Position numbers and translations under genes: made by a program
In this document: positions 6,073 to 58,812 of the stretch, in pieces
Numbering within the stretch: the first letter of the stretch is position 1
Layout of the letters: each line of letters starts with the position of its first letter
Notes under the pieces: generated by a model
Database searches by the model: none
The model's input: only the letters and a program-made list of their open reading frames with translations
What the model was told of the DNA's origin: nothing
NCBI GenBank assembly: GCA_976226885.1
Contig: OZ320313.1
Location: 52,700,001-52,764,000 of the forward strand
Length of the DNA: 64,000 nt
Reading direction: 5' to 3'
From: Iphione sp. A-MEVVRFRX5
Taxonomy: Eukaryota

Positions 6073-6117
6073 CAGAGAACGATGAGGTACTTACCTGAAA
6101 GAAAAATTTGCATTAGA
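6073..6117 (-). other. Recursive splice site RS-C with 22-nt RS-exon (6094..6073)
   Basis: Minus strand reads ttCTAATgcaaatttttctttcag|GTAAGTacctcatcgttctctg|GTATGT: CTAAT branch point, pyrimidine tract, CAG|GTAAGT at 6095/6094, downstream donor CTG|GTATGT at 6073/6072. Confidence 0.75.
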
Positions 6118-7960
6118 ATAGGTTGCAAGGGTATTCATCATCTGAAATACTATGTATCTTCATTAGATCCAGCCAAATATACCACTGGCTTAGAAAGATA
6201 GCTAGTGTACAAGAAATAAATGGAAAGTAAGAAATGGGTACTTTGAATAAAACGATGTATTAATCTCAATAGAAAATGCCCCTGAAAGAAAGAACCCCGC
6301 GAAACCATTATCGATTGTCATACACGTCAAATGGCTAATTGTGTTGAAGTCCATTACCCCTTCCTGCTTTGAACAAGACTCCTTGTTTTTCCCCTTTAGC
6401 TTGAATCGAAATGCAGGCATTACGATGCATTCCTTGCATTACCATCTATTTGCATAATTTGCAGGCATGTTTTCTGGCAAGATCAATAGCCATTTCTACT
6501 TGACTGAAACACTATCCGTCAACCAGGTTTTCGGCACCTACGGAAGGCAAATGATGCATACCGAAAAAACGGTGTTTTCTCTTGAATCTTTCATGCACCC
6601 GACGAAATGTGAAGGCTCCGAGCTTGTACTGGGTGGTTCACAGTAGATGGGGACAGAGAACAGGGATCTAGGACGAGCAGAAGTAGGATGTCGTGCGTAA
6701 TCATGCTTTTCAGTTGTTCAAAAATGATTAACCTGCTGGATAAGTGGAGGGAGCCGCTGCGACATGTCGGAGTGATTGCATGGTGTCCTGTGCTGATGAC
6801 AGCAATGTTTGTCGATAAGTCAATACTGAAACTGGTGGGGTACATGTCACGGGCTATAACATGTATTAACAGATGAAACAGTTTCCAATGTCATCCATCA
6901 TTATTTTTAATTAAAAACAACGGGTAATTTAGGAACAAATACAGATTGTTCTGCACTCTTTTTTCCTTGACAGTAATATAAGGCTTTGCCTTGTTTGATA
7001 ACCTGTTAACGTTTTATAGCCTATAGCTACATATCAATGGGCCATGAGTCACTTTTCCCTGCCGTTATGACTTTGGTTTTCAATCGGTGTAAATGGCCGG
7101 AAGGGACTCTCAATCGGTGCCAAGCTTTCATTATTACCAAACCACCATCGCTTCAAAGCCTCCAATTAAGGGGCTTTCGTGTGCCAGTGCCGCAGGGTCC
7201 ACCCAAATTGTTTCAGGGGCGCCCACAAACATCGCTGTTCCAGTCGCTCATATAGACTCCTTTGTCTTACAAACTTCTCCATTAAGAAAGAAATCTCACA
7301 CTTTCTTTCTCTGTGATCTTTGTACTTCTATGGGCTTCTCTGTCTGTTGCTCTGAGTGTCTCTGTCCCTGTATCTGTCTGCCACTCTCTGCCACTCTCTG
7401 CCACTCCCCCTCTACCTCGAAAAGCCCGTGAAAACACTTACAGAATCAATGAATTCGACTCATTGAAAGTTATTGACTGATTCGGGGAGTGGGCGAAACC
7501 AGAGAGGGAAACCCTCAATGAGCAGAGAATGCCGAATCACAATTAAAACGCCTTTCAGCCGAGGCTTGAGTTACATAATGCCTCAAAAAAACAACCCATC
7601 GAAGGCATGCTGCCACCCTCACAGGGGTGCAGCACGACGAAGTGGCGAATTCCTCACCCTAATACAGAATAACAATAGTATTGATTTGCAATAATTGTAT
7701 TTCATTTTTACCTTTCCTCACACGAAATGCCTAATTATCAGAGGACTTATAATCAGATTGAGGATGAAGGAATGAATGGGAAATCGAAAGTGGGGAGTAG
7801 TGCACAGCAACACTTGCCAGAACTGTGAAATGCTGTTTCTCCCACAAGAAAGAAATGGAATTCGAGGAAGCAATGAAAACCAAAAGCTCTATAGATGAAT
7901 GTAACCGCACACAGAACGCAGATTATAGAAACAATCAAGAGAATGGCGTATTTGTCTGAC

Positions 7961-8013
7961 TTAATTAGGTTCCGGAAGAAATTGATAATTATCGTTTTGC
8001 CAGGAAGTAATTA
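7961..8013. promoter_or_regulatory. Homeodomain + ETS site cluster (enhancer candidate)
   Basis: TTAATTAG, TCCGGAAG, palindromic GATAATTATC, CAGGAAGT and TAATTA within 53 bp. Confidence 0.4.
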
Positions 8014-8599
8014 AAGGATTTGAAATTGGATTGTCCTGGAGCGACTCATGGTTCGCAGGCTCAATGAAGAAGTGCCTGCCTTGATTTTTGTTTCCGCATC
8101 ATTCCGACTTGGAACTATCAGTCTCATAAATGGGAAAACATCTATATGTCCTGCGGGAGACATACGCCTCATAACGGATGCTTCTTGTCAGTCGAAGGTT
8201 ATCAGGAGACGATCAGGTTTGTCTCCGAGAGTAACTGAGGATTCTACGTGGGATATTAATGTCTACCAAATAAAGATATTCTCGTAATAAAAAAATCTGT
8301 GAACTGATAACTAGAGCCACAACAGAGGGAACACAAAGATAGAGATCAAGGACGGTTAGGAACAGTTAGACAGAAGCATACATCCTGTCAAATAAAACAT
8401 TTTAGAACACATATACTTTTCACACACAGGCAGAGAAGACACAAAAGAAAATGGTGCATGGATAAAAAGCAAAAAGAGAAACTGCATTTCAAGCTGTTGT
8501 TTGACACTGTCCTATTGGGACAGCTATGTCTTCCACACTCACTGGGCACCGTGGTCGTCAAATGACTTGGCACCAGAATAAGGTCCATCAAAAGGGCGT

Positions 8600-8710
8600 G
8601 ACCTGTCGGAGTTGGCCCCAGCCAATCAGCGGGCGCAACGATGCCGCCATGTTGGTTACAAACAAACACATTCGGATTGCCCCCACGTGCAATCGCTGAT
8701 TGGATTAGAT
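8600..8710 (-). promoter_or_regulatory. Promoter-like motif cluster (two inverted CCAAT boxes, YY1, E-box)
   Basis: CCAATCAGC 8622-8630 and GCTGATTGG 8695-8703, GCCGCCATGTT 8643-8653, CACGTG flanked by GATTGC/GCAATC. Confidence 0.35.
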
Positions 8711-11700: not shown

Positions 11701-14000
11701 CAGGGCACGTCTTTGTAACGGTGTCAAGTTTCTACTTCTGTGTGCTTTCCAATGTGTACCCAAGGCCTGCAGATGGTGGGCATATCAATAAGAGGGGCAA
11801 GGGATCCACTTCACCAGATATGTGTACTTTTGAGAAGTAATCTCTGGACCTGGTGCTCATCTACATGGAGTTGTTAATAAGGAAATAACAGAAATCCTCC
11901 AATGTGACGCTAGGTTGCCAATACAAGGCCCGTCTCTGTTGCCGTGAAACACATTTGAACCCCGCTTTGCCTGCCTCGAATGTCTCGTACGAGCAGTAAT
12001 GTAACGGTCCAAAAATCACCAATGAAATATGAGCGTGATGTAGCATAGACACGCGGCTGATGGCCAGAAGGGGGTTTAGCCCGGGGGAGTGCTGCTGAAC
12101 AAATCATCAGGAGTTACCAAACATGCAGGTTAGATCATAATTACATCTTACTGCGTCGCTTAGCAAGGCCCAACGGCCGCGCCTACGCGTCCCTGGTGAT
12201 CACCACAACCAACTCCTACTCGGGGGAAGATTTCAGCAGATACTCGCGGTCTGTTAAGTGTGTTAACACTGCGACCGGTACTCTGCGAGGCTCCCGGGGG
12301 AGAAGCAGACCAATAATCATAATGTGAATGGAAATGAGGGAATTTGTAGCAATGGGTGGAAAGGACGCCCGTTGATAGAGAACGGGGAAAAACTTGGTAT
12401 GGTTGTTAGAGGAACGGGTGAAAAATAATAGCGGCAACACCTAAGGGTTAAACACTGATATAATCCTTACCACAGTGCCTTTTCCAGACAATTGTGGATA
12501 AACCTTTAGCACAGAGAGATGTCTGCACCTTTGTTGACCGAATACCTGGGCAACTAATATTTACATAAATATGTACATTCTATAGTTTTTTTTCTACCGT
12601 TTGCTGTAACGATGATAGCCCTTAATAAGAAGCAGATGTAAACAAATGTATCGATAGAAGTACGACTATATAATTTGTGTATACAGTTGAAACACGCACA
12701 GGGGACCAACCTTGGACTGGTCAGTTTTGATCTCTCCCACAGTTTGGTCATGACAGATACAATATTTATGCAGTGAAGTGAATGGTTTGGCTTCAGGAAG
12801 CTTGGTCTCTATCCTAGTTTAGTCTTTTCAGTGATCTGGTTTTTAAACGGGTCTGCATTGTAATGTGATACATGTATATGCATAATATAATATTATGAAA
12901 ACAACATTTGAGGTTTTTTTAAAATGCTATGGTAAATGAAGCATTACATTGACATGTATATGGAATTCACCAGTGCAAATTTTGTTTATATGTACATGTA
13001 TACTGAAAAATAATGATGATGTCATCCATTGATTGATTCAACAGACAACATACAAGTTTAGGTACAAAAATGCATATGCATTAAGCATATAGGTAACCCT
13101 TGTTCCATTCACTAGGGCGTCATTGTTGTTATTAGGACCTACAATACACCCAATGTGTTAATAATGCAGTACTCAGTGAAATTATATCTACACTGAAAAA
13201 ATGAACTTGTCCTAGCATTGTCTATATGACAACTTTTAGGGTTGTCATTGAGTTTTTGACAATCTAAATTGTGTATGACAATGGGATAATCAAATTGACA
13301 ACACTGTTTGTCATAAACATGTCACACACTTGTCAAATCATCCCTTAGGTCTCACTACACCAGTTATTTTAAGGGTAAAGTGACAGAATCTATACCCAGA
13401 TTATTTCAAGGAAATCAATGAATATACAACTGTGAAATTTAGAATATTATCAGTAGATTTACTAAATTCTATACAAAGGTATTTCTGAGATCAGTAAAAG
13501 AAAGAAAAACATGTCATTCAAATTCAAATGTAGCATACCTTAAATAACAGTTATGGAGTTAGAGACACTTGTCTGAGGTGAGTGAACATACTAACTCATT
13601 ACAGACCTTTAAAATGGTCCTAGAAGGAAGTGCTTTATACCAAAATGAAGCTTGGAACCTCCCCTACATCACTGTTGCATTGGATTTTGTCTTACATGGT
13701 GTTTAGGACCTTATATTTACGAAAACGTACGATCGCGATACATCGCGATCAGTAGTCTTAGTGCTTGTGGATAGCAGATATTGTGCTTTCAATGGCTTGG
13801 AGGGTCTCACTGATAATGGATATTTGTGGTTTTGACATGGCAATGCTCTGCTCTTGTTAGTGTGTTACCAAGTTGTGACTGGGCCAGCCTGTGTGTGGCT
13901 CCTCTTTATTCATGTTTTACCTCCTGTTTCTATGGTGACCCTCTTTCAGGTCTCACAATGCTTTGTGGATATGATTTGTTATGGCCCTGTATCAGAGACA

Positions 14001-14042
14001 CATATTCAACACGGTTTCGACTACTGTCTCTTCAGGCACATA
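14001..14042 (-). ncRNA. Minimal type I hammerhead ribozyme of the Penelope element (probably partly decayed)
   Basis: Minus strand: uaugugc CUGAAGA GAC agua GUC GAAAC cgu GUU gaauaug. Intact CUGAnGA and GAAA boxes, 3-bp stem II, 2-bp stem III with GUU triplet, 7-bp stem I with one mismatch and two G-U pairs. About 120 nt downstream of the GIY-YIG stop, same orientation. Confidence 0.72.
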
Positions 14043-14163
14043 GTGGGGCTGATTTTACCAAGATATTTTACTTTAGCTTAGGTTGCTTAATAAGTTATTT
14101 TTTTAAATTGATCATTCCAAATGGGTATGGTAATTTTTGTGATGAGGCTAGTGTCCCACTGTG

Positions 14164-14480
14164 TTAGTTTTGATATTCTCTGTCCATGAGATTAAGTCCC
14201 TGGGGGGACATGGTTCTTAGGCGGTGGATCCACCTTTTTTTCTAGTTTGTTTCTTAGGTCTTGGGATTCTTTCGTATCTGGGTGGCAGTGGATAAAGTCC
14301 ATGACTTGTATTTGTAGGTTCGTCATGAAGTGATGTTTTCTCCTATTGAAATGTTCTTTTATAAGATTCTTCTCTGGTGTCTTTCTTATGTCATAAAAGT
14401 GGTTTGCTAATCGGTCTCTAAGGTGTCTTTTCGCTTGCCCTACATAGCTCACTAGACATTTTTTTACAGCTGGATATGGA
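14164..14480 (-). pseudogene. Penelope-like element GIY-YIG endonuclease C-terminus, frameshifted
   Basis: CKKC-LVSYVGQAKRHLRDRLANHFYDIRK...HFNRRKH...LEK-WIHRLRTMSPQGLN is recovered if one A is removed from each A7 run (14459-14465 and 14235-14241). Matches the PLE GIY-YIG pattern CxxC-x3-YVG-x5-R...HF...H...E-x2-WI-x2-L-x-T-x2-P-x-GLN. Confidence 0.88.
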
Positions 14481-14802
14481 TATTTATACAGAGTACAGAG
14501 TGCCAATATGAGTGTTTATGCAAGTTTCTCAAGACCTGTTTGTACCAGACAATGCTGCTGTCACAGTCCTTCATCAACATTTTCTTGCTTGTGTTGCAGT
14601 CCTGAAATGTAAATTTTTTTGACTCATCAGATTGAACATGCCATTGCTGAAATGAGGTTGCAAGCCCTTTTTTTGTTGAATTTACACCTAATTTCATTTT
14701 TTTTATAGAATTTCTCAAGTTATAAATTTATAATTTTTTTCCAAAAATTACCTATCTGTACTTGACAACAGTCTGCACATCAGTTGATATCATAGTCTCC
14801 AC

Positions 14803-16150
14803 CTATGTTGACTGGCAGTGATTGGGGATAAGCACATCTGACTTCCCTTCCATGAAGGAAACCTGCCTAGCCTCTCCTGATTTTTCCATTATTTCCAATG
14901 GTTTTGTAGCTGTGCAAGGTGCCTTTGCTTGTGCTTTCGAGGGTTTTGACAGGATTTCATACATGTCACACTGTTGCTTTACACTTGCAACTGAGTAGTG
15001 GTTTAAGCTTACTATATTGCGGTGCAATACCTCCATGCAATAGCTTTGTACATGTGAGTTTTCGAACCGAGTGATTGTTTTTTTTCCATGAAGGTCTGCT
15101 ATTTTTGCCATTTCCAGCATCATTCTTGACAACTCGTTAACCCCCATAGGCAAATGGCTGTACCATATGGGGCTGTCTTTTTTCTTTTATGATGAATGGA
15201 GGGGAACAAGGGACTCTCTGGGCCCTTGGTATCCAAAGACCATCTTGCCAGATATTCCTGGAGCACAAATATTGGACATCTGTCAACATTCTAATCATTT
15301 CCCAACATCTTTGGGGTGAAGGGTCTACCATGACTAGTGTCCCCTTGTCAAGTTTTGGTTATACATTCATTGAACTCAACGTACTATCTGTTGTGGTGAT
15401 CCTTCTTCATCTGTAGATCTCCCACTCTCAATGATCTTGTTTCCTGTTATCTGCGGAAACCAAAGAATTTGGTAACCATGTACTAAACTGTTGATCTTAG
15501 TGCCCGGGGATTGTGGATGCCCATAGCTCCACTTTCCCATAATAATTCCTCTTCTTCATCTGATATCACTTCTGTCTGAAATATTTATTTTCTGTCATTG
15601 AATTACTCATTTTTTTTCAACATGAAATTGAATGGAAATGGATGAAATAGAAATGAATGTCTTGTTTAATTTTGTTTTTGTTATTAATTAATAATTTTTA
15701 GAAGAATTTCACTCATTTTATTTGGGCATTTCCTAATCCGTTGCTCTTCAATTCTTTCCTTTTAGCCTGAAGCACTTTACGTGAGGTGTCCAAAGTGTGT
15801 GAAGTTACCAAACTGTCAGAGTATAGGTTATCTTCCAGATATCATATTCCTCTCCATTTGTCTTCCGAAGGGACATTATATATTCCCCTATATACACATC
15901 TAAAGTTTTCAGGGGAATGTCTTCAATCTTTCTGTTTTCACCCTTCCTAGACACCCACGCTTGCATTTTCTCCAGGTCCTTTGTTGTTTTTCTCACTGTC
16001 TCCTTATTTCAGTTCTTGTCAATGTACTCATGCAATTTCGCTTGATGCACTGCTACATTTTCTACTTCATGATCATGTTCTGAATTAGCATCTTTTTTCC
16101 ATTGTTTTTCTTGCAATATTTCCTCAAGCTTGTCGTCAGCAACATCAAAT
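14803..16150 (-). mobile_element. Crypton (tyrosine recombinase / DUF3504-type) DNA transposon relic
   Basis: Collinear decayed motifs: TVRKTTKDL..W..KGENRKIEDIP..LD.YIGEYIMSLRKTNGEEY; SRKVLQAKRKELKSNGLGN; EEEELLWESGAMG..NPRAL..TV*Y..TKFFGFR; GDLQMKKD...*YVEFNE..TKT*QG; RCP; P-MGVNELSRMM..MAKIADLHGKKT-NHSVRK..CTKLLHGG; HRNIVSLNHY..AS.KQQ. The R, H-x-x-R, H and Y catalytic positions are readable despite stops and frameshifts. Confidence 0.88.
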
Positions 16151-17782: not shown

Positions 17783-18291
17783 AATGAAAGTGGCCCTACT
17801 GCGGAGTATGTCCTGGATGATATGTTTGTCTCTCAGGAACTTGTGTTTTCTTACAATTCTTCATATCATTGTTGAGCAGAACTCGACTTAAAATAGTGTA
17901 AAGCCATTGTGTTTTATGCCGAGTCACCATGGGAACAATGCAGATATTATCAGTGATCCTTTATGAGGCCCTGGATAATGGGCGCTTGTTATGTCATGAT
18001 ACCTCGTAACAACCCATTGTATCCTTGACATGTAATGAACGACTGTATATGGTTGATGTGCATAGGTTGTGTTGTCACTATTGGCAAGTAGAGTACAAAG
18101 GTACCATGTTCCGACACTCTCGTCGGACTTGCCTACCTGCTGCTGCTGAATTGCTGAATCACTGTACTAGTTTGCTGAAGAAGAATAAAAGGCTTATATC
18201 AAACCTGATGCTGTGGTCTTGGCTTGGTGCTACAAGTGACAGGCTTTTTGATTATGACAAGAATAAAGTAGTCAATGGGATCAGTTTCTGA
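17783..18291 (+). pseudogene. Decayed unknown ORF just inside the right end of the CACTA-like element
   Basis: Protein-like reading (GPTAEYVLDDMFVSQELVFSY... then QILSVILYEALDNGRLLCHD*...LFDYDKNKVVNGISF*) broken by a few stops and one frameshift, ending just before the subterminal repeats. Family not recognised. Confidence 0.35.
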
Positions 18292-18316
18292 CAACCTATT
18301 AGTCATAAACTTTTAA

Positions 18317-18509
18317 TGACAATGCTAAACTTGTACATTGTATGACCGTCAATTTAACAATACAAAACTTGTCACTAGAGACAACCTTATGACTAGTTTA
18401 GTTTATCATTATGACAATTCTACAGTAGTCATATCATCAAGTTTATGACAACCATCCTTGTCACAAACTTTGAGTGACAATGCTAAACTTGTACATTGTA
18501 TGACCGTCA
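18317..18509 (+). repeat. Subterminal direct repeat (35-bp perfect, about 70-bp imperfect, two copies)
   Basis: TGACAATGCTAAACTTGTACATTGTATGACCGTCA at 18317-18351 and 18475-18509. Confidence 0.9.
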
Positions 18510-18708
18510 GCAGGACAAGCCAAAACTTGTTACTAGAGACAAGTCCATGACAACTTTATTTTTTCAGTGTACATGTATATACAAGTAAATTTTATATGGT
18601 TACACTCACATAGTCTTTTGACTTCAAGAGTTACTGACAGGATGTGATGCAAGGTGAGGTGTAACCTCAGATGTAGTCTGCCTGTTAAACCTATGTGGTG
18701 ATCAGGAC

Positions 18709-20644: not shown

Positions 20645-20658
20645 ACAGTAGATGGCGC
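20645..20658 (+). promoter_or_regulatory. CTCF motif
   Basis: ACAGTAGATGGCGC, 13/14 to CCASYAGRKGGCRS, in a CpG-rich patch. Confidence 0.4.

Positions 20659-25273: not shown

Positions 25274-25276
<3 letters not shown>

Positions 25277-25322
<46 letters not shown>
25277..25322 (+). repeat. (AG)23 microsatellite
   Basis: Direct read. Confidence 0.97.
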
Positions 25323-25328
<6 letters not shown>

Positions 25329-29950: not shown

Positions 29951-29999
29951 TTAGGTTTGACAACTCTTTATTTACACCTTGCTTGCCAGAAGTACCCGG

Positions 30000-30720: not shown

Positions 30721-33164
30721 CGAATTCTAGTACCGGGAGGCTAATATCAGCCGTTGTGGTATTACCAGTGGATCCTGGATGGGAGCAAGACTACTGGTGT
30801 AACATCAGGGGTGGGCGGGGGGGGGACTGACATCTCGTCGCTGCCAAGCCAATCCCTCGAGTCACGTTTAATCACCTCCATCCCGACACTTCTACGATTC
30901 CCAAAGCTCATCTTTGGACTACAACTGTCAGAAGGTGGCCCGCTGGGTAGGATGAGTGAAATAATTCGGCGAATTTCACACGCGGCGCCTTGACTGCATC
31001 AGAGAAAGCAGAGGTTTCCATATCCTAGACCATGGCCTTCTGCAAATAGCTGGAACTTAATACGGATGTTTATAACAAACGGATGCTTGCAATTTGATTA
31101 GAATCTCCGAAACTTGCCAACTCTCATCTAGTACAGTAGCATAAGGGTCGCACATGTAGAGCACACATCTTCGGAATCAAAAGAAAATGTTATAATGTAA
31201 TTACGAACATAAGGTGCTCACATAGTCATGAAAGCAATGTTCACAAACTGGTTTTGGAATAGCCAACATAGTTCATTTTTTGCAGATCATCCCCATGAGG
31301 ACGAGATACTTTAAGAATATTGACCATATGTGTGCATGATTTCAAGAAACTGCTCATCCTGCTGTAAAGACCGTATGCCAGTTAGCACTAATTCATGCAT
31401 CAAATGCAGTCTCTAACAGAAATGGGAAACGTTTCATGATGGGACGTAATGGGCGTCAAAATGAAAAGACACACTTCCGATATGCAGTGTCTTGTTCCAG
31501 ACTAGACAGATCATATTTGGATCTTGCACCTCTCGAAAATGACATCGCTCCAGAATGTGGTTCCCATGTGCGTGATTTCTTGCAGCGATTTGTTTTTTCA
31601 TAACCATAGTAACTATTAAGTCACCCGGATTCATGTGGCTTCCACCTGCTTCTCACCTGTGCGTTATGCTGCCACACCCACAGACAACCCCCCTTCCAGC
31701 GCCTCTCGCACAGGTTTGTTCATACCGACTACTTGCATATTGCTTTGATCTTGCCGATGAGTCTCCCAAGGTAAAAGAAACCCTCATATTTGTTTCCGAC
31801 TCTCTTCTCCCTCCTCGTTCTCTGTAGATTTCCTCCCCCTCTCACTCACTTTCCCATCCCTACTATTTTTATATTTCTAGACTTTCAGATAGTGTATGCT
31901 TCAAGATATCGGAACATAACTTCTGTGCTTTTTTTAAAAATAGCTACGCTCTTGTTTGTACGTGCACTGTCGCAACATAATCTTCTCTACAGGATTCTGT
32001 ATTTCAAAGTCTTGTTTTCGATTACTGTGGATCACTACCTTTGGACTCATACAATTGATGTACATGCACATAGACGTCTATAGATGTATGAAGATACTGC
32101 AGAATATCGCTGAATCTGAAGGGCTGAAATTCTTTTTTAGATAACGGTTGTAATTAAATGCGCAGAAATGAAGGGAACCGATGCTATTTAATGTGATAAC
32201 GGGAATATAAAAGAACTGTTCCTAATTATAGAATAATTCAATTATAGAATTCAATCGATTCACCTAATAATCTGTACCTGTATTTTAAATTTTGAAATGA
32301 TTTGCTTCTCAGATATATCAGTCTTTTACCAATGAACATGTACAGGTGAATATATTTATATTGAATGACCGATACTAAGCACATGCATTTTCCTGACATG
32401 TTTTCTTAACGTGTGGCTTTTATCTCCCAGTTAGTCACTTAAATATTCTTACCAGAATACTTGCTACCAGGTTGCTACAGGAGGGGAGAAATTCATCAGA
32501 TAGTAGGATTGTAGGTCCGTGTGTGTATTTCTACTTTCTGTTGATGCCTGGGTGAGCGAATGGTTGCCATTTGCGAGGCCGTCTCGAAACCCTCGCTTCT
32601 CATTACTTGAAGAGAAAGCGCACTGCTTTGAAGAAGGCAGGTAGGCCAGGTCACTGTGTCAGTGGCAAACGGGGACGACTAGGTAACATCCGCTAACCCA
32701 AATAGAGCCGCTCCCACCCTCTACAATTTTTAGGTTCTGTCTTCTTCCACCCAATATTCCTATCTCACAACAAATTTGTTATTTCCTGCGACCAATGTCT
32801 TCCTATGTGCATGAGGAAAAAAACACATGAGCGTCAAAGACATCGCGTGCACCAAATATCTATTTCTCCTCTACGAGTCCCCCCCTGGAAGCATTTTTCC
32901 TCATCTATATGAGACGGTATTTTTCACACGGGGCCGTAATCAAAAGCGTGTATCCTGACATAAGAAGAGCAAAGACGAGGACGAAATATTCTAAGATGGC
33001 TGTTTGCTTGTAAATGAGGGTTTTACTGGTGTAGGCTAAACAAAATCAACTGGCAGCGGCTTGTTAAAAGGTTTTGATAGACAACAAATTAGAATGCATT
33101 CGGGCAGATATAATAGAGGGAAGATATTCAAGCTACAATATTGACAGAGACTCGTATACATTAC

Positions 33165-33230
33165 CTCTTCTCTCGTATGACAACAAGCTGTTACTCACCT
33201 AGAAGAATAGAAGATGATACTAGGTTAGCA
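33165..33230 (-). other. Recursive splice site RS-B with 34-nt RS-exon (33198..33165)
   Basis: Minus strand reads TGCTAACctagtatcatcttctattcttctag|GTGAGTaacagcttgttgtcatacgagagaagag|GTAATG: consensus CTAAC branch point, pyrimidine tract, TAG|GTGAGT at 33199/33198, weaker downstream donor GAG|GTAATG at 33165/33164. Confidence 0.75.
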
Positions 33231-36200: not shown

Positions 36201-38387
36201 TGCGTTGCGAACTTTATTCAATTAATTATGCAGAGCACATCATCTTATGTGGCCATGTCTATTGACGTGTACAAGATGGCGCCACTGGTAGGAGGAGGAC
36301 CTGCCGCACGTGCTGGCAAAGAACCTACCCGTTACTCTCAGTAGAGACATATTTTTATTCTAGGCGTTTGTTCGCAATTTTAAAGTAAAAGGTTCGTCGT
36401 TCTTGTAAAGAAAAATGGTGATTAACAACTTGTCGCCTATATCAGGTCTAGAATTGGTGCTCCAGTAGGAAAGGGGATGAGATGTTATTTCAAAAGCCCA
36501 ATTGAGAACGTATTTTTACTGGAATTTTATAGACAGGCATAGACATTTGTACATGTCAATCACAAAAATTCCAGTGTTCACTGATCAAACAAAGAATGAG
36601 AAGTATCTGCAACTGTCCGCCAACCTACGGAAACATTAGGTGTCAGGCTGCGTCAGATCGCAACAATCTGCTTAATTGTCGTCTGCTTTGGTGAATTGTC
36701 GTCTGTTTTTTCGAGTGCTCTCGCAGTTCGCCCTGGAGGCCACTGTCGAGACCGAAGTGACGCATCTGACTTGAATGATGTGGCTCTGGTCCCACCTGGC
36801 CGTGTAATCCAGACTGTTTGAGGCCTCGCCTTTTTTCCTCTATTTTTCTAGTGTGAAGGACTGACGTGTTTGGCCACTGGTGCAATCAATGTGAAGCTCG
36901 ACAGACACTGAGCAGATACCCACAATTTCTACCCAAGCTTATCTAACAAACAGCCCCGAGGGCGGAACTTGGCAACTGGACGTTGAATAACACATTTCAG
37001 ATGTCGTGGATCCTTGTTTCCGTAAACACTTGGGTTTAATGGCCTTGCATACTCCGCTCGTGTAAAATTCTTTCCAAAAGTTTGGCAGGTTGTAGGTATT
37101 TTACAAACGCATGATACATTCTTTTTCAGAGGTTAGGAATATTCTACTAGAAAGTAAAGGAATGATATATAGTGGGTGATCGAATTAGAGTGGGAATATT
37201 TGCCGTTTGGAAGTAATCAGAAAGTTAAGAGTGATATGTCACCATGTGGAGAGTGATAGTATGAATGTGGGTATGGAAATGCTCTTTCAACTGTTCGGTC
37301 AGTGGCAACTGAGATACATTTCGCATATGTACGCGCGCAACGAAGCGCTTTTAAATCAATCCTCATATATAAACAGGATAAGATGCATGTTCAAGGACAT
37401 CATCTGTGCCTTACAAGTCGGGAGCCTTGCACCCGCAAAGAGAGCCATGTCTGTAATTAGGTGGCATAAATAGAAAACCGCAGTATCTATTTGTGCCGGC
37501 GGCCAAGAAATAGTGACGGCCATTGGTAAAGACTGGGAAAAGCTCTGCTGCTCAACTCGTGGCACACAGAGACGCAGACACACTGTCTCTTGCTGCGACG
37601 TTTCCACTATAGGTCGTGCCAAGAGAAAAAAGAAGACAGCATGTGCTTCAAGACAAGGTCTGGCACATATGCCGACGGCTTGGCTGAAAGTGGTCTGGAG
37701 TCTTTAGGGCAATTGGAAATCTTTTCACTATATTTTGTGTCGGCAAGAAGGATCGAAGATCCTTGTTGGTTTGTTTTACAGTACAGGTGTTCTCGTCTAA
37801 TAAATGAAAGCACATGTACATATAACGCACCGCCTTGACAGGAACATACTTATAAATCATAGATTTGATGGAAGATTCTTCGCCGATGTATTAGAAAAGA
37901 TAATTATCGTTAGTCGAGAGGCACGTCTTTGACCTTCACTTGTTATGTTGATGTAAGAAAGCGTCCATGATGCAGCGGCATAACTTAAAGTAACCGTAAG
38001 GTAAAGTTTGAAACGAACTAGGTATCAACGAAAGGTCTTTTAAAAGTTCATTCGCATACTTAATTGCTTTCAGACATGGTAGATACCATATTTCAAGTAG
38101 GAAGCAATATGGTCTTAGTCTCCCTTGTGCCTAAGAATAACTGGCCTTTTTAAGGCAGCTGAGAATAACTAGACATTTCAGGCAAGGCATTATGGCAATG
38201 ACCCAGTTCCCTCAAAGGAGCTCTACAGGAAGATGGAATGTGAGCATTAGCCGTTATGTTATTAGCCAGGGGGTCTTCATAAAGGTCTTCATAAAGAATA
38301 GATATGGACTACATAACTAGTTATGTTACGTTCTCCTTAACTGTCGCCTTTCGTCATTCCTTTTCGGTCTCTCTTACTCTCTTCGTC

Positions 38388-38437
38388 TCTCTGTCTTCCT
38401 ATCTCTCTGTCCATCTCTCTCTCTCTCTCTTTCCCTC
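38388..38437 (+). repeat. Imperfect (CT)n tract
   Basis: Direct read. Confidence 0.85.
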
Positions 38438-41400
38438 ACACAAGTCCATATAAAGTACCGGTACGTGCCTGCATGCCCATCTAGACGGCGTCCGTCCTTC
38501 ATTCCCTCTAGGACAGCCAATTTTGGACGTTTATGATCTAGACCAGACCACGGACGCACAACCAGTGTTGCCATGACCCCGTTGCCCAGTCGATGCTCAC
38601 CTACCTCAGTCTCCAAAGCAGTGGATACTTCAAAAAAGCAATCGAATCCAGAAAAAGTAGCCTTATAGGAAAAAAGCGGGCTAATTTGGGGATTACATAT
38701 AAATAATAAGCTGACCGTTAAAGGAATAACGACGTAGTACACGAAACAATCCTGCTCGGTTACTTTCTAGACATTTAGCTCGGCCAGAAATTAAGATTAG
38801 ATGACATGTCTATATCCTGCGGCTATGGGGAGGTCAGCCTGCGGCCCATGGTTCGCACTTAAACTGACCCTATCATGCGAGGTGTCGTTTTAGTTTAATA
38901 TTTGATAGAGAATTGGCACCTAGCCGGCACCCTCGAAGCTATTATAGCCTCCGTCTAGATCCAGCAGACATGATGACTAAGTAGCGTTTGTCGAGAGTAT
39001 TGTACTCGATTCACAGAATGTACTCCCGCGAATTAATTGCCTACGCACTGGCATAGGATGTTGCACATTTACTTCCGATGGACGAAGGAGAGAATGACGA
39101 TCGGATACACGGGAATCCATCTTTTTACTTGTAAATGTAAAAATATGAAAACCTTTCAAAACATTCCGATGTATTATCCTTAAATATTGACATTGAGCCA
39201 AAATAATTAATGAACTTCATCGAGACCTCATCATTCGTTATAAATAATAGCTTAAAGTACTGTAAATAATCCCAAGTTTTATTGTGTTTGACAAACAATG
39301 GACAGCAACGGACGTGGCCATAGGAGACCGAGCGTAAAATAAGCCATCGAACTGAGGATGCTACGTAGCTATATGACCTTCTTGACCTTCTAAAACCGAC
39401 TCTCTCAGACTGACCTCTTGAAACCGGAAGGATAAAGCACGCATGCCCGCGCGGTTGCCGTGGAAACACATTCCCCGTGCCTCTGGGAATGCTAAGAAGA
39501 TTATATACAAGCTAATTGATCTAAGCTGGCACCATCAACGTTGTATTATCAACACAATAGCAAGCAGTATGAAATCCTTTGGCTGTCTTTTAAGCTTATC
39601 TTACCTGCGTAGCATTCATTAAAAACTATGAAGTGGTTCAGTCGGTGTGCTTATGCTAATGGCCCGGTAGGAGGATATTATAGAACACTGAAGACTACTT
39701 GGTACTTTGATGTTTAGTCCATGCATATTGACTACCTTCTGTGTTGTGAATAAGCAATCATTGTTGCTAAGAATTACTGAGTGAGTGCGGGTGGGATAGG
39801 GGCTTTTTGAATATCAAGTGAAATGCAAATGCCCTTCAGTTTCTTCGTTGTGAATAACAATTTGCATACGTTTTCAATGAGGAAATTGAGCACAATGCCA
39901 AAACATAATCGACCATAGAAGAAAGATTCTCGATAAAGAAGGAGAACATTGTCGGCTCATTTTTGTTATCCACCTGTCCCCCAAGGCTATTAGAAAAAGC
40001 AAGTGAAAATCTGCATTCAGCTGGATGAATTGTTCGCTTTCTTTATTTCTTGAAGGAGAGAAGCAGGGGGAAAATGTCAGATCACCTTTGCATTTCAGAT
40101 GAGGCTTTATTTCAGGAAGATATCCGAACAAAGGGGATGGATTCGTGCAAAGCTGGAAAATATGAAAATTTTGTCGAATACTTCAGACTCATCGCGAGTA
40201 AATGTTGTTTCAGTCGTCCAACGTGCAACAAAACCCTTCCTGAGCAAACTCGACCGATTATCACAAAAGATTAGTCCGTTAATACCCCAGATATCGTCGC
40301 CACAAAGCGCGGACTGTTTCAAACATCCCTCTCACCAAACCCTTTAAAGCGTCTGCTCCAGGGACTATTTTCTCTGCGGCGAGGATTATTCCGCGCCCCG
40401 TTTCCGGTGCAGAAAGATCTACTTTTGAGGCAGCGATTCGGGTGCTTGTAATGATGAGCGATTGCGAAGACTGGGTCAATAATTACCACATCGACCGCCG
40501 GGAGCGTGCACATCGGTGCTCGTTGAATAGACACATTGCTCTCGCCACGTGCGCTCTCTCTTCTCGTCTACTGTGTCCTCTCAGGCTCTTGTCCCTCTCT
40601 CGTACCCACGAGCTCTCTCGTCTGCTTCACGCTCTCGCACTCGCGGTCTCCAGTTCACTATATTTCTCTAGTCCTTTCCCATCTATGCGATAACCGCCAC
40701 CCCTCTCTGTCTCCATTTTTGCCTCAAACGCTACTCCGCTCCAATGAATGACTTGGGTTGTTTTGAAAAAAAAGTAGCAGACGTTTCTGCCACTCAGCTT
40801 CGCCTGGGCCCGAAGTACTACTTTACCTCTCAGCTGTGAGTCATGTTCAGTTGGTATAGCCGGCGCAACACAATAGGAAGAGCTACTCCCCGTTCGTCGA
40901 CGTTTCTCAAACAAATGCACGCTGAGAGGAGGGGCTCAGCTCGTTGAAGGCCCTCGAGGTAGGTCAACTGAGTAGGGGCACACATTCTACCGAGGCCGAC
41001 ACACAAAGACCAACCGCAAGTACCTTTTTTCAAATTGGTAGATCTCGAGTTTACGAAAAACACGATGGAAATGAAACCAGTAACAGTTCATTGCCATTGC
41101 AAAGATCTGCTAATAGCTTGATGGTGACATAAAAGGATAAGGATAACTGATAACCAGGTATTTTGTTTTTAATGCCTCAAAACAATACACCATGATTTTA
41201 TATCATCGTTCTTTTGGTAGATTCTTGAGAGACATTAATTCATTGTTATTTACAAAATTTCTTTTCTTTGCAATTAATACCGCGTGCGTTCAGCTGTAAA
41301 CGAGCTCAGCCAGACGGTCCATGCTGTAGCATAATGATGCTGGGTGAAAATCTAATTTCATTATCCCTAATTACAAATCGCACAAGCTAGGTCGGCCGAA

Positions 41401-44345
41401 TGAAAAATTAACTCTAATTCACTGCTGTCTGGTGGACGATTACAAAAAGACACTAACCCGTTAATAATCTGGAGAGATATGACACAACCACCCACACAAG
41501 AGGTGATAAGAAGGACTATGAAGAAAAAAACAGATACCCCGACCAAAAGCGGACAGATAGAAAAAAATCAATAATGTTCGGTATTGACTGAGTCTGATAG
41601 ATAAGGGGGTTCATCTTGGCACGTAGAAGTGTTGATGGCATCGGGCCTAATTGAATTCTTATCTAGGAATAACAGACAAGGCGCAGTCGGTCGGTTTGTT
41701 GGCTGCGGGCTGACATATCATCCAAGCGGCGGGCGGGGCGGTGTGATGGAAAGGGCCATGCCGCCCCCGTGCACGTATGTAACGGCCGACCCCCTGCCCT
41801 CAGGGGACGTGTGCGTATAGCGAAGCGCCCTGACGCCTCGGCCCTCGACGACCTGCCACTGACATGCTTACATACAAACTGTCTCACACAGCTGATCATG
41901 TATGACTATATGTCGTCACAACGATGGGATGGCAACTATGTACACAATGCCGAATAATTATGTGAATATAAATATATATATATATATCAGATATATTTAC
42001 ATGCATTAGGTGAAAGTACAGACAAACAAAAAGCCCGGGAACCAATATTCTAGACCAATTTCTGTATAATATAGCCTCGGAGCCATTCAGTCTGGGAAAT
42101 GAATTGAGGATGCACCTTCCGCGTCTATAATTGGTTAGGTAATGCTTGTACAAGAAGGCACAAAGAATTGCTTCCAAATCTGAAGTGGAGCAATTGTCTG
42201 TCATGATTGAAATCCACCACAGCATTATATACACAGGCAGTCTGATACACTGGACATGTGTTGTAGTATGTTGTGTCCTATCGCCAGGCGCGAGGACCCT
42301 TCCCCATTTGCCCCAGGGTTAATTGGATAGACAGTAAGTACAACAGTCTGTGTATATTCTATCACTGGTTCCGTCCAGCTAATTCCAAGAGACACCGTTG
42401 AACCCCGAGCAAGCCAACTGACTCTTTCAACATAACGGTTTGTTATGCTTTTAAAAAGTAAAGCAGTAGGTTCATCACAGATTACCCAATTGCATGAGGA
42501 ACGTGTAATTGGTTGTGATGAATCATACCGCCCTCATATTTCAGCGGGGACCAATTTGTCGCTACTCTTAAAATGAATTTCCCTCCCACGGTTATTGGCT
42601 TTCCTTAAATTAATAACTGCTTGGTGGTTCTTAGATTTCATGTTTTCAACTTTTCTGCAATGAACGCCTCCAAATCATGCTGATCTCACAGTATATAATT
42701 CATGATACACAGGTGTCCATAGATGTGTATAACAATATACGACCGTACGGAAAGTCCTAAGATGATCAGTGTTTACTTCATCGGGTAATAACGCTTGCTG
42801 TTTTAGTCAATGGATACCGTAATGAGTGTAACTCTCTATATTTCCTTACTTTGGGAGTATTCTTTTTATTCTGTGTCTTATATGTCATTGATCAATGCCT
42901 TGTTACCAATCAGTAAACCTCCGTACATAAATATGTATCCTTGTAGCATATCATTGAAATAAGTGTACTTTTCACCATTATATATCCTTATTGTCGACTG
43001 TAATGTTACATGACATCGGTTGTATTCCCTAGTGTATTGTGCCAGCACTGCCAGGCAGAGGCGACCAACACTCTTACAAATTGAAAATTCTGCAGCAGAA
43101 ACTGTATCGGCATCCTTGGTATCCAGGGTAGGCCTGAAGGGGAATAATCTACCAGCTGGTAGCTAAACTGTGTAACGTAGTACGTGCCACTGGCAAGTGC
43201 TAAGGAAGCAGACAATGCCAAACGACATCTCGTGACTAGTGGGGTTCTTTATAGGGTCTCTGTTAACCGTTAACCTCGAGCCTTACGTTTAAGTTAACGT
43301 CGCTGAAAGCAGCGTCTGGCACCAAATACATGTACCATACAGCATTCCCTTTTCTATGCTTTTCTATGCGATAGAAACCAATCCTAGCATAAATATTAAA
43401 GTTGTGGGGGCAGGTGCGGGAAATGCTTTGTTCCTTATTTTGAAATCTAGTGGCAAAGGAGCGGATCAGAAGGAGAATAGTTATACACGGGGTCACGACT
43501 AAGTTGCATGCTCAAATCGAATCTGAGAGGAGCCCCAGCAGGCACCGCGTCTTCTTGTACAGCAGTCATCATACCTGTATGTGAGCAACTGTATTCCGCA
43601 GGGGTTTCCTATACTCTAGACTCTTAGGATACTGTTGTAGAGGTTTTGCAGTCAATATAGATGTAAACAATGTATCTGGTGAACTGGAATTATATATACA
43701 AATTACATATGCATACTCAATAATCAGATTTCCTCAGTGGCCTGAGTGGCTACTGTTTTTTTACCTGAACCTTGATATAAACTACATTCTCCCTCAAAGT
43801 ACGAGTGTGAGAAAACAACAGAAGTATATAGGGCCAATAAAGTCTTACATGTAGATCACAGATTATTATTTGTATTATAGCATGCAGATCACGATAACTT
43901 ATTGGTCTTTGGACTCTGCATAGTTTAGAGAAAACCGTGAATTAGACAAAAGGTTTGATAATACACATATACAGATGCACTCCCTTTATCTTTTCAGTCC
44001 TAGTTTAATCGTCATTATGGTCTCCCTAACCTGACCAGAAATAAAGAGCAACCGATAAGCATTCGTGAGCAGCTCTGAATGTGAGCCGAAACATGCAAAG
44101 TGAAATCCGAGTTGCTGGGCAGGATGGACGCTTGGGTTATGACGGAGAATTCCCTGACATGGTGACGCAAGCCTGTACATCAAGGTCACTGTGCCAGATG
44201 AATATGAGAGGTTTGTCACAGGTTCGACTCTGAGGCGGACAGAAAAAGTTATCGTGGTGACACACAAGTTCTGAATTTGTCCGTCACGATTAGACACCAT
44301 GCCCTCTTGCCACTTGAAGGTTCATCTTGGTGGTTCCCCACTTAC

Positions 44346-44465
44346 CAGGTTTGCCCCTTTTGTTCCTGGCAGTTGCTAGGGCTGTGTCAGCCGCCATCCC
44401 CAGGCTCAGGGCGATACAATGGAATTCAAACCAGTTTACAGGTTGTGGTTGGCAAATTGAAACAC
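44346..44465 (-). CDS. Candidate 120-nt exon, possibly carrying a start codon (MAADTALATARNKRGKP, phase-1 donor)
   Basis: Acceptor tttttgcttctccccttcag|G, donor CTG|GTAAGT, length a multiple of 3, one open frame, internal gggATGG in good Kozak context. Product not recognised. Confidence 0.5.
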
Positions 44466-44670
44466 CTGAAGGGGAGAAGCAAAAACTGTAGTTACTCGGC
44501 CAGACGCAATCTAACACGCGTCGACGTGAAGGAAGGGTGGTGATTCTGGTGCTGATGGTTAGAGAAAGTGGGGGATAGGCTTTAAATAACAACAATATTA
44601 ACTTGGCGTGAGTCATGTGTTTTGGGAGTGTGCGGACGGGCAGAGGTAAGCCACACCTTTTGTTCCTCAC

Positions 44671-44742
44671 CTGGACAGTCACACACCTGCAGCAGCCACA
44701 CCACCTGAGCAGGTAACAGTGGCGGGCATGAATTATGTCCAG
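44671..44742 (-). other. Candidate 72-nt exon (likely 5'UTR) upstream of the 120-nt exon
   Basis: Acceptor ttaatttttttctgtgcgcacccttcttcgtgacag|C, donor CAG|GTGAGG, then a 205-nt intron to the next candidate exon. Contains a short uORF (MPATVTCSGGVAAAGV*). Confidence 0.4.
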
Positions 44743-47899: not shown

Positions 47900-48080
47900 G
47901 ACAATGACGGATTAGCCTAGGGAGATGATACGCAGATTATCTGCGAGATTATTGTGGATTATTGTCGCCCATCTGTCCCCCCTGCCCAGGGGGTCCGTCG
48001 TCCCACACACACGCCGCGGTCTCCGGAGGATCACTGACGTTTGGCGGGAGGCGGCGCTGTCGTCCGTGTCAATTATCGGA
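47900..48080. promoter_or_regulatory. GATTA (TAATC, Otx/Pitx-type) cluster in a CpG-rich island
   Basis: GGATTA, AGATTA (within palindrome CGCAGAT-T-ATCTGCG, 47931-47945), AGATTA and GGATTA within about 55 bp. Confidence 0.4.
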
Positions 48081-48541
48081 GAGCGCAGCATCCAGATCCA
48101 CGCTGCAGTATTGTGACCTTATAATTATATCTACACGGAAACAGGGACTGTAATATTGTAAGCGGCAGAGAAAACCATGGTTAGATTCTGGTTTTAATTC
48201 AATACAGACCACCATGTGTAGACAATTTTGTTTTATTTATTAGAAACATAGCAATGGCGGGCAAGAAATGTGCACGTTCATAAACAGAGCCAAGCGAGTA
48301 CTTTAAACAGTAAGCCGAAAGACCTGTCTTCATTCGTAACATTAAACATGTAACACAGGCTTAAATTTACAAATATCTTTTCGGTGGAATAAAACTTTGC
48401 GACGAAAGCCGGAGTGCCATTAAGGTTAAAGCCGTTTCCTCGACCCCAGCAGGAGCAACCCCTTCAGGAGATTCATGCCGCAGCATAAAGCCTGAGAAAA
48501 AGAAACATAGTGCTTGTCCCTATTTCCGGTCAAGCTTAACC

Positions 48542-48558
48542 TGCCACGAGGGGGCGCC
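48542..48558 (+). promoter_or_regulatory. CTCF motif
   Basis: TGCCACGAGGGGGCGCC matches CCASYAGRKGGCRS at all but one position. Confidence 0.5.
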
Positions 48559-57500: not shown

Positions 57501-57576
57501 GACTCTGGGTATACTACATCAGGTACAACACAGAGGCAGACTGATACAGACGGTGTGGGAATGAATGGAAGAAGAG

Positions 57577-57580
<4 letters not shown>

Positions 57581-57630
<50 letters not shown>

Positions 57631-57670
57631 GACAGAGAGAGACAGAGAGAGACAGAAACAGAGAGACAGA
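57581..57670 (+). repeat. (GA)n microsatellite grading into (GACAGAGAGA)n
   Basis: Direct read. Confidence 0.97.
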
Positions 57671-58742
57671 GCAAGGTACAGGCACTGACAGACACGAACA
57701 GACACGAATAGGCTGAGGGCTGTGGAATCACGTGCGGCGAACCACATGCATTGGCTCTCCATCCGTCCTGGCTGCCCTAACTCAGGATAAAGTTTAATTA
57801 GCCTTGTCACTGACAGCCTTCCGGCGGAGGATGCCACAGTGCCGGAGGCCATACATATCATCATCAGAAATGAATAGACAATTAGGCTGCCGCCCGGGTG
57901 GCCTCCTGCAGCGAGAGACGGTGAGGTCTGTCCAAGCTGTAGGGAACGAATAAAAAACACATCAGCATGCCACCGTCAGGGGTCAACAATTAACGCTCGT
58001 GGAGACATCACAAAGACAATGTGTCCAGAATGAAACGAGTGGCTGTCTCCATATGGGTAGTACAGAAAACAAACAAATGTCTGACAATGTCGGTGCTTGC
58101 ATGTCGAATACTCAGTGCAGTGTATAATATTGTGTATGTATAGAACATTTCGTGCCGAGAGGGTTAAAGCACAAAGCGAAGCAAAAATAGATTAACGGTT
58201 TTACCTGAAGGGGGAGTTTGTATTTGCGGTATGAATATACTTATATCTATATGCAGGCATATGCACTTAATGGTATTTCACCAATCCTTTGTTAGTGATA
58301 TCCAGTAAAGCCTTTTCTGCTTGATAGCCTCGAGGGCTATGGCAATACTGTTGAAGTTCAAACGTGGAATTTGGGTGTTACATGTATATATCGCGGTGTC
58401 TAATTTGTCACATTTTAAGAGGAATTAAAGAGACTGTCCCTATTGGCATACCCTAATTTTCCGTTAATGTATGTGACTTTGGGTAATTAGTGTCTCTTTA
58501 CATGTGGTAAAGATCAGCACACTGCCAATTTTTAAACATATTAATTTACCCTATGCATAAAGAAGGGAATACCTAATAAGACGGAGGCATGCCGTACAAT
58601 TTCTATAAAATCCCTTATCCCAAAAGAAATAGTTCAGTTGGAAAATCTTTGTTCAAGATGCATCAATGGCTGTTTTGCTCAAATTTTGAAAACACGGTTT
58701 TGTTAGCCATATAACTAGACTGCGCTATTGATGCGAACTTAC

Positions 58743-58812
58743 CCACACCTCTTTTGCAGCAACGGTGTCCAAAATACTTACCTAAAAGGAAACGGAAAAG
58801 ATAGGTTTTAGT
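58743..58812 (-). other. Recursive splice site RS-A with 39-nt RS-exon (58781..58743)
   Basis: Minus strand reads TACTAAAacctatcttttccgtttccttttag|GTAAGTattttggacaccgttgctgcaaaagaggtgtgg|GTAAGT: branch-like TACTAA, near-pure pyrimidine tract, TAG|GTAAGT at 58782/58781, second perfect donor TGG|GTAAGT at 58743/58742. Confidence 0.75.

What the first reader, a model, noticed from the sequence alone, without database searches (positions are those of the whole stretch)
6073..58812. A ladder of three evenly spaced recursive splice sites, each with an RS-exon, in a giant minus-strand intron
Seen: three minus-strand sites have branch point + pyrimidine tract + YAG immediately followed by GTRAGT (58782/81, 33199/98, 6095/94), spaced 25,583 and 27,104 nt apart. 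Each has a second donor 39, 34 and 22 nt downstream. These were the only minus-strand AG|GTRAGT matches I found by eye, and all three have the full architecture. The only plus-strand AG|GTRAGT I found (13575-13583) is GAG-preceded and inside a transposon. Established: this is the ratchet point / RS-exon design described for very long introns in Drosophila and vertebrate neural genes. Inference: a very long intron is removed stepwise in roughly 26-kb pieces in what looks like an invertebrate deuterostome, where I know of no characterised cases.
Basis: partly seen in the sequence, partly recalled or inferred. Interest (0 to 1): 0.92.

Follow-up and report, generated by a model that had tools for sequence, protein, structure and literature searches.

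The report
Three candidate recursive splice sites
Three widely spaced sites on the minus strand each have the full sequence layout of a fly-type recursive splice site, far more often than chance allows, but no RNA data, host gene or species could be obtained, so stepwise removal of one giant intron remains a well-supported prediction.

Summary
AG|GTRAGT occurs three times on the minus strand (AG|GT at 58782/81, 33199/98, 6095/94) and once on the plus strand. The bare octamer is at chance (4 found, 3.8 expected). The full layout is not. All three minus sites have YAG plus at least 14/20 pyrimidines upstream (background 4.3% per AG). Simulations expect 0.07 such sites per strand, and P(3 or more) is about 0.001. 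Each site also has a weaker second donor 39, 34 or 22 nt downstream (about 6% chance per site). The plus strand and reversed controls show nothing comparable. The sites are not repeat copies or a segmental duplication. Minimum spacing of 25.6 kb has P=0.008.

I read these as fly-type ratchet points with cryptic RS-exons on a minus-strand transcript (confidence about 0.68). Not shown: transcription, the host gene, the species, or that one intron spans all three. An exon-like candidate at 44346-44465 could split it.

Shepard et al. 2009 reported ratchet-site enrichment in sea urchin large introns. The scan's first readers left 26 unchecked notes mentioning recursive splicing elsewhere in this genome. 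I class this as a new member of a known kind.

The parts
58782..58813 (-). RS-A acceptor half. It has a branch-point-like TACTAAA (58813-58807, A at 58808), 18/20 pyrimidines, and TAG ending at 58782.
   Evidence: acceptor PWM 13.0, second best on the strand
58743..58781 (-). RS-A ratchet donor GTAAGT(A) at 58781-58776 and a 39-nt cryptic RS-exon. The exon is open in 2 of 3 frames and its length is a multiple of 3.
   Evidence: donor PWM 10.7
58737..58742 (-). RS-A exon donor tgg|GTAAGT. An alternative gag|GTGTGG has its G1 at 58748.
   Evidence: 8.7 and 7.7
33199..33228 (-). RS-B acceptor half. It has CTAAC at 33228-33224 (A at 33225), 15/20 pyrimidines, and TAG ending at 33199.
   Evidence: acceptor 9.6
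33165..33198 (-). RS-B ratchet donor GTGAGT(A) at 33198-33193 and a 34-nt cryptic RS-exon. The exon is frame-shifting, with stops in 2 of 3 frames.
   Evidence: donor 10.6
33159..33164 (-). RS-B exon donor gag|GTAATG
   Evidence: 6.8
6095..6116 (-). RS-C acceptor half. It has CTAAT at 6116-6112 (A at 6113), 14/20 pyrimidines, and CAG ending at 6095.
   Evidence: acceptor 5.4, the weakest of the three
6073..6094 (-). RS-C ratchet donor cag|GTAAGT(A) at 6094-6089, the best donor on the strand, and a 22-nt cryptic RS-exon (frame-shifting).
   Evidence: donor 12.7
6067..6072 (-). RS-C exon donor ctg|GTATGT. A weak alternative aag|GTATTC has its G1 at 6045, which would give a 49-nt exon.
   Evidence: 7.9 and 4.3
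44346..44465 (-). Unverified exon-like candidate of 120 nt with one open frame. It pairs the strongest acceptor on the strand with ctg|GTAAGT. If real, it would divide the supposed single intron.
   Evidence: total 24.8, next best 19.0, plus-strand best 18.6. An exhaustive protein search found no homologue of the exon part.
13576..13583 (+). The only plus-strand AGGTRAGT. It has no pyrimidine tract, is GAG-preceded, and lies in the AT-rich, CpG-poor block with transposon relics. It serves as a control, not part of the system.

Best explanation
The three sites are functional ratchet points, that is intronic recursive splice sites, on a long minus-strand pre-mRNA. Inferred mechanism: each site is first recognised as the 3' splice site of a short cryptic RS-exon of 39, 34 or 22 nt. 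That exon is defined by the pyrimidine tract and YAG upstream and by a moderate donor downstream. Joining the upstream exon to the AG recreates a strong 5' splice site (exon end followed by GTRAGTA). This donor out-competes the weaker RS-exon donor, so the cryptic exon is removed with the next segment and leaves no trace in the mRNA. Non-coding RNA of 53 kb or more would then be removed in pieces of about 26 kb. Shown here: the sequence layout, its restriction to one strand and its statistical excess. Inferred: transcription, the order of the steps and the outcome.
For: Motif and coordinates are confirmed. All 3 minus-strand AGGTRAGT sites carry YAG plus at least 14/20 pyrimidines, against 0 of 1 on the plus strand. 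The background rate of that context is 4.3% per AG, which gives about 8e-5 for three of three. With a combined acceptor-plus-donor PWM the sites score 21.9, 18.4 and 14.4, and the plus-strand best is 12.5. In 2000 dinucleotide-shuffled strands, 0.018 sites at or above 18.4 are expected and 2 are observed (P=0.0005). For sites at or above 14.4, 0.45 are expected and 5 observed (0 of 2000). Reversed-sequence controls peak at 15.1 and 14.8. Markov-4 simulations give 0.07 strict sites per strand, with P(3 or more)=0.001. Separate donor and acceptor counts are symmetric between the strands, so only the juxtaposition is strand-specific. Shepard et al. report the same pattern for real ratchet sites. 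Each site has a second donor at +22 to +39 scoring 6.8 to 8.7. The chance of that within +15..+60 is about 0.06 per site, and the second donor is always weaker than the ratchet donor at 10.6 to 12.7. That matches the Drosophila cryptic RS-exon model. All three donors continue with A at +7 (GTRAGTA), which extends U1 complementarity. The sites are not copies of a repeat and the window has no 26-kb duplication. The minimum gap of 25.6 kb has P=0.008 for random placement. The window has no recognisable host coding sequence, as expected for a giant intron.
Against: There is no RNA evidence of any kind. No host gene, flanking exon or species was identified, so minus-strand transcription is inferred only from the sites themselves. 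Poly(A)-signal counts and base skews do not mark the minus strand as transcribed. Site C has a modest acceptor (5.4) and its 22-nt RS-exon is short for exon definition. Site A's branch-point motif is imperfect (CTAAA). Segments of about 26 kb are roughly three times the Drosophila mean of 9.1 kb. The PWMs were typed from general knowledge rather than trained on this species, and the thresholds were set after seeing the sites. Conservation could not be tested.
Confidence: 0.68

Rival explanations
1. The sites are the 5' edges of expressed cassette, micro or poison exons of 39, 34 and 22 nt that begin with GTRAGT. These exons would be included in some mRNAs, as with Ubx m1/m2 or vertebrate annotated RS-exons. 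The main role would then be regulated isoform choice or NMD switching, not removal of a long intron in steps.
For: The same layout serves expressed RS-exons in flies and mammals. Exon A is 39 nt, preserves the frame and is open in two frames. Exons B and C would shift the frame, as poison exons do.
Against: In all three the ratchet donor is clearly stronger than the exon donor, which in Drosophila predicts skipping. No coding homology was found. Exons of 22 to 34 nt with stops are unlikely to code. The wide, even spacing in non-coding DNA fits intron subdivision better.
Confidence: 0.14
2. The finding is a chance coincidence amplified by selection. A reader scanning for AG|GTRAGT picked three hits, and the pyrimidine tracts and second donors are then over-read.
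For: The octamer count is exactly at chance (4 found, 3.82 expected). The thresholds (14/20 pyrimidines, the +15..+60 donor window) were chosen after the fact. One of 1000 Markov simulations reached 3 strict sites. Site C is only marginally above the controls (14.4 against reversed-strand maxima of 15.1 and 14.8).
Against: Independent features multiply: pyrimidine tract plus YAG gives about 8e-5, second donors about 2e-4, and spacing 0.008. All three sites are on one strand, and neither the plus strand nor the shuffles produce anything comparable.
Confidence: 0.08
3. The sites act on a long minus-strand transcript but not by recursion. Examples are strong U1-binding sites that protect the transcript from premature cleavage and polyadenylation, or decoy or terminal exons of separate non-coding transcripts.
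For: The donors have extended U1 complementarity (AGGTRAGTA). The window may be intergenic or lncRNA territory, since no host gene was found.
Against: U1 binding alone does not need a pyrimidine tract, a YAG and a branch point placed exactly against the donor, nor a second donor downstream. General donor density shows no strand bias.
Confidence: 0.07

Closest known systems
Drosophila intronic ratchet points with cryptic RS-exons (Hatton 1998; Burnette 2005; Duff 2015; Joseph 2018; Pai 2018, PMC6110457; PMC8605326)
   Same: A juxtaposed pyrimidine tract and YAG|GTRAGT. A short cryptic exon is closed by a weaker donor, and the ratchet donor wins. There are several sites per long non-coding stretch, the exons are mostly out of frame, and the motif is enriched on one strand only.
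   Different: Segments here are about 26 kb, against a fly mean of 9.1 kb. RS-exons are 22 to 39 nt, against about 50 nt. There is no junction, saw-tooth or conservation evidence. The organism is unidentified and does not look like Drosophila (44% GC, chromosome over 38 Mb).
Vertebrate recursive splicing through RS-exons in very long neuronal-gene introns (Sibley 2015; Blazquez 2018, PMC6224609)
   Same: The RS-exon is defined first, and the reconstituted 5' splice site then competes with the RS-exon donor. The sites lie in very long introns.
   Different: Only nine fully suppressed intronic sites were noted definitively in mammals. Vertebrate long introns show no sense-strand enrichment of the motif (ratio 0.9 to 1.5). 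Here the density is 3 sites in 64 kb on one strand.
Predicted ratchet-site enrichment in large introns of sea urchin and non-dipteran insects (Shepard, McCreary and Fedorov 2009, PMC2773006)
   Same: It is a purely computational inference from AG|GT-centred combined splice-site scores, using sense against antisense as the control, in a non-insect invertebrate.
   Different: That study gives a genome-wide rate of 0.54 per 100 kb in sea urchin, with no individual loci, RS-exons or spacing. This window has about 4.7 per 100 kb, with second donors and regular spacing.

Membership tests
Ratchet point / intronic recursive splice site | A 3' splice site (branch point, pyrimidine tract, YAG) directly abutting a consensus 5' splice site (GTRAGT) | tested here: met
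   All three sites have it. The site A branch motif is imperfect and the site C acceptor is modest.
Ratchet point / intronic recursive splice site | The combined motif is enriched on the transcribed strand relative to the complementary strand and to chance, while single donors and acceptors are not | tested here: met
   3 sites against 0, with 0.07 expected per strand. Donor and acceptor counts are symmetric.
Ratchet point / intronic recursive splice site | A cryptic RS-exon, meaning a downstream donor within tens of nt that is weaker than the ratchet donor | tested here: met
   donors at +39, +34 and +22 score 8.7, 6.8 and 7.9, against ratchet donors at 10.7, 10.6 and 12.7. The background chance is about 0.06 per site.
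Ratchet point / intronic recursive splice site | The site lies inside a long intron of a gene transcribed on the same strand | not testable with these tools
   No annotation or RNA data were available. No host exon was recognised and the look-ups were blank.
Ratchet point / intronic recursive splice site | Splicing intermediates: exon-to-site junction reads, saw-tooth nascent coverage, segment lariats | not testable with these tools
   No transcriptome resource is available in the tool set.
Ratchet point / intronic recursive splice site | High conservation of the acceptor|donor core with a poorly conserved RS-exon body | not testable with these tools
   No related eukaryotic genome could be reached. 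An exact 26-mer scan of metagenome contigs was blank, which says little.
Repeat or transposon-borne motif (considered as an artefact) | The sites share flanking homology or lie in copies of one element or a segmental duplication | tested here: not met
   There is no overall homology (B-C z=0.7). Self-BLAST shows only microsatellites and one 158-bp tandem.

The most novel reading that the evidence does not exclude
Fly-type zero-nucleotide recursive splicing with cryptic RS-exons is a systematic way of removing giant introns in a non-insect, non-vertebrate animal, here in steps of about 26 kb. That would mean the mechanism is either ancestral to bilaterians and largely lost in vertebrates, or evolved repeatedly wherever introns became very long. 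The 26 unchecked first-reader notes on recursive sites elsewhere in this genome (Dachsous, Fat, DDR and alpha2delta introns) would then belong to one genome-wide system.
Probability: 0.45. Interest if true: 0.65.

Novelty: new member of a known kind. Interest (0 to 1): 0.5.

Why it matters
Intronic ratchet points have been shown experimentally only in Drosophila (hundreds) and vertebrates (very few). Whether the fly-type system exists in other animal lineages bears on whether it is ancestral or a dipteran speciality. The only earlier hint I found is a 2009 motif count that includes sea urchin. This locus offers three precise sites with explicit predictions: junctions to three named AGs, three RS-exons that should appear if the ratchet donors are weakened, and saw-tooth resets every 26 kb or so. 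Existing total RNA-seq of the species could settle these quickly. The step size, about three times that in flies, would also bear on what limits the length of a single splicing step.

Tried and rejected
- **Bare motif enrichment.** Rejected as evidence, because AGGTRAGT is at chance.
- **Segmental duplication or a shared repeat as the source of the ladder.** Rejected. B and C share AATACCNTTGCA and ATCTAATGA upstream at the same spacing, and these are the only minus-strand copies in the window. There is no wider homology, so I leave it as a curiosity.
- **Host strand from intronic RNA genes.** Rfam and tRNA scans were empty.
- **Strand of transcription from poly(A) signals, base skews or cryptic-site depletion.** Uninformative.
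- **Host gene from ORFs.** There are 182 stop-to-stop ORFs of 75 aa or more and none looks coding. Pfam on the ten longest or most exon-like gave only weak GIY-YIG and DUF3504 transposon relics.
- **Species or locus by exact protein look-up.** One look-up of encoding contigs and ten ORFs in the listing of cluster members were all absent.
- **Species from the transposon relic.** The search for homologous proteins was blank. The atlas gave generic Crypton-type recombinase clusters with no useful taxa.
- **Exon candidate 44346-44465.** An exhaustive phmmer search of its 151-aa ORF hit only Kelch-repeat proteins. The hits fell on residues 56-93, which are the translated pyrimidine tract upstream of the acceptor, and their scores were inflated by repeats. 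I judged them spurious.
- **Conservation by an exact 26-mer in metagenome contigs.** Blank.
Full report
**What is there**

Reading the minus strand at the three places gives these sequences:
- Site A: ...ttactaaaacctatcttttccgtttccttttag|GTAAGTAT..., with AG|GT at 58782/58781.
- Site B: ...tgctaacctagtatcatcttctattcttctag|GTGAGTAA..., at 33199/33198.
- Site C: ...ttctaatgcaaatttttctttcag|GTAAGTAC..., at 6095/6094.

A scan of both strands finds AGGTRAGT exactly four times. Three are these minus-strand sites. The fourth is on the plus strand at 13576-13583. The plus-strand hit is GAG-preceded with only 9 of 20 pyrimidines upstream. It sits in an AT-rich, CpG-poor block (12-20 kb) that holds weak GIY-YIG and DUF3504 relics on the minus strand.

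**Is it more than chance?**

The octamer alone is not enriched. Dinucleotide shuffles expect 3.82 copies and 4 are found. The signal lies in what surrounds it.
- I defined a simple context of Y at -3 plus at least 14 pyrimidines in the 20 nt before it. All three minus sites have it and the plus site does not.
- Among all 3,835 AG dinucleotides on the minus strand, 4.3% have that context. Three out of three is therefore about 8e-5.
- I also scored every AGGT with generic acceptor and donor weight matrices. These were typed from general knowledge and used only for ranking. The three sites score 21.9, 18.4 and 14.4, and the best plus-strand site scores 12.5.
- In 2000 block-wise dinucleotide-shuffled strands, the mean maximum is 13.9. 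Sites at or above 18.4 are expected 0.018 times and observed twice (P=0.0005). Sites at or above 14.4 are expected 0.45 times and observed five times (never reached).
- Reversed, non-complemented strands peak at 15.1 and 14.8. Fourth-order Markov simulations give 0.07 strict sites per strand, with P(3 or more)=0.001.
- Donor and acceptor counts taken separately are symmetric between the strands: 24 against 23 donors at 9 bits or more, and 27 against 23 acceptors at 10 bits or more. Only the juxtaposition is strand-specific. Shepard et al. describe the same pattern for ratchet sites in long introns of flies, other insects and sea urchin.

**The second donors**

Each site is followed by a further donor:

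| Site | Offset | Second donor | Its score | Ratchet donor score |
|---|---|---|---|---|
| A | +39 | tgg\|GTAAGT | 8.7 | 10.7 |
| B | +34 | gag\|GTAATG | 6.8 | 10.6 |
| C | +22 | ctg\|GTATGT | 7.9 | 12.7 |

The chance that a random minus-strand position has a donor of about 7 bits or more within +15..+60 is about 0.055 to 0.06. That gives roughly 2e-4 for all three, and this feature is independent of the first test. In each case the ratchet donor is the stronger one. In Drosophila that arrangement makes the cryptic RS-exon always skipped (PMC8605326). All three ratchet donors also continue with A at +7, which extends pairing to U1. RS-exon A is 39 nt and open in two frames. B (34 nt) and C (22 nt) shift the frame and have stops in two frames and one frame respectively (read). 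Fly cryptic RS-exons are described as about 50 nt, poorly conserved and usually out of frame.

**Artefacts excluded**

The three flanks do not align with one another. Gapped global alignments are no better than shuffles for B-C (z=0.7). A sensitive self-BLAST of the window shows only GA microsatellites and one 158-bp tandem, with no 26-kb duplication. The ladder is therefore not a by-product of repeats. B and C do share two short upstream motifs, ATCTAATGA and AATACCNTTGCA, at nearly equal spacing. On the minus strand these are found nowhere else in the window. I cannot explain this and treat it as a side observation.

**Spacing**

For three random points in 64 kb, both gaps reach 25,583 nt with P=0.008, and a gap ratio of 0.94 or more has P=0.029. 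This suggests regular subdivision, but it rests on two gaps and was tested after the fact. The segments are about three times the Drosophila mean of 9.1 kb (PMC6110457).

**What could not be shown**

The window has no recognisable host coding sequence. No ORF exceeds 181 codons, and ten of the longest or most exon-like ORFs give nothing in Pfam beyond the transposon relics. Rfam and tRNA scans are empty, so no intronic RNA gene marks the host strand. Poly(A)-signal counts and base skews do not single out a strand. Every attempt to reach the genome record, the species or a sister sequence failed. Transcription of the minus strand is therefore inferred only from the sites themselves.

One further point bears on the 'single giant intron'. 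The strongest acceptor on the minus strand has its AG ending at 44466. It is followed 120 nt later by ctg|GTAAGT, with one frame open. This is the best exon-like pair on either strand (24.8, against 19.0 for the next and 18.6 for the plus-strand best). An exhaustive protein search found no homologue of that exon. The only hits were Kelch-repeat proteins matching the translated pyrimidine tract upstream, which I regard as spurious. If the exon is real, A would lie in one intron and B and C in the next.

**Comparison with what is known**

The layout is that of Drosophila intronic ratchet points with cryptic RS-exons, and more loosely that of vertebrate RS-exons. The sequence-level defining features were tested and met. 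The features that need RNA or comparative data could not be tested.

In the library I could search, recursive splicing outside insects and vertebrates appears only in Shepard et al. 2009. They counted ratchet motifs in large introns and found 0.54 per 100 kb on the sense strand against 0.066 on the antisense strand in sea urchin (ratio 8.2). The scan's own first readers have left 26 notes mentioning recursive splicing elsewhere in this genome, including Dachsous, Fat, DDR and alpha2delta introns. These are unchecked and I could not examine them. They are a lead that the pattern is genome-wide, not evidence.

**Verdict**

These are probably genuine recursive splice sites with cryptic RS-exons on a minus-strand transcript (about 0.68). 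The host gene, the species, the number of introns and the actual splicing intermediates remain unknown. It is a new member of a known kind and moderately interesting. The claim is easy to test once RNA-seq of the species is consulted.

Noticed in passing
window:12000-20000: This block has lower GC (0.37-0.385, against 0.42-0.47 in the rest of the window) and a CpG observed/expected ratio of 0.38-0.39, against 0.58-0.85 in the rest of the window. It contains weak GIY-YIG (14195-14515, minus) and DUF3504 / Crypton-type recombinase (14806-15186, minus) relics and a 158-bp tandem duplication at 18283-18566. It looks like old, possibly methylated, transposon debris inserted in otherwise CpG-rich unique DNA.
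   Followed up: partly
window:13700-14400: Another first-reader note places a hammerhead ribozyme at 14001-14042. Rfam found nothing there, either at gathering thresholds over the whole window or at E up to 1 on this 701-nt stretch. A minimal Penelope-type hammerhead could still escape these models.
   Followed up: partly
window:44293-44745 (minus): A 151-codon open frame contains the strongest minus-strand acceptor (AG ending 44466) and a 120-nt exon-like segment closed by ctg|GTAAGT (G1 at 44345). Just upstream are two more good donors (G1 at 44670 and 44686) and a 17-nt tandem at 44668-44712. No protein homologue of the exon part was found.
   Followed up: partly
window:33247-33279 and 6135-6168 (minus): Sites B and C share ATCTAATGA and, 32-33 nt further on, AATACCNTTGCA upstream of their branch points. 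These are the only minus-strand copies of either motif in the window. There is no wider homology between the two flanks.
   Followed up: partly
window:60183 (minus): A further strong acceptor abuts a weak donor (ccatccag|GTAATG; acceptor 10.5, donor 4.1), 1.4 kb upstream of site A. It has no nearby second donor, the nearest being +177 at 6.5 bits. It is probably not a ratchet point.
   Followed up: yes
window:25243-25344, 38364-38439, 57578-57671: GA/TC microsatellites are the only sequences shared between distant parts of the window. Otherwise the 64 kb is strikingly free of internal repeats.
   Followed up: yes
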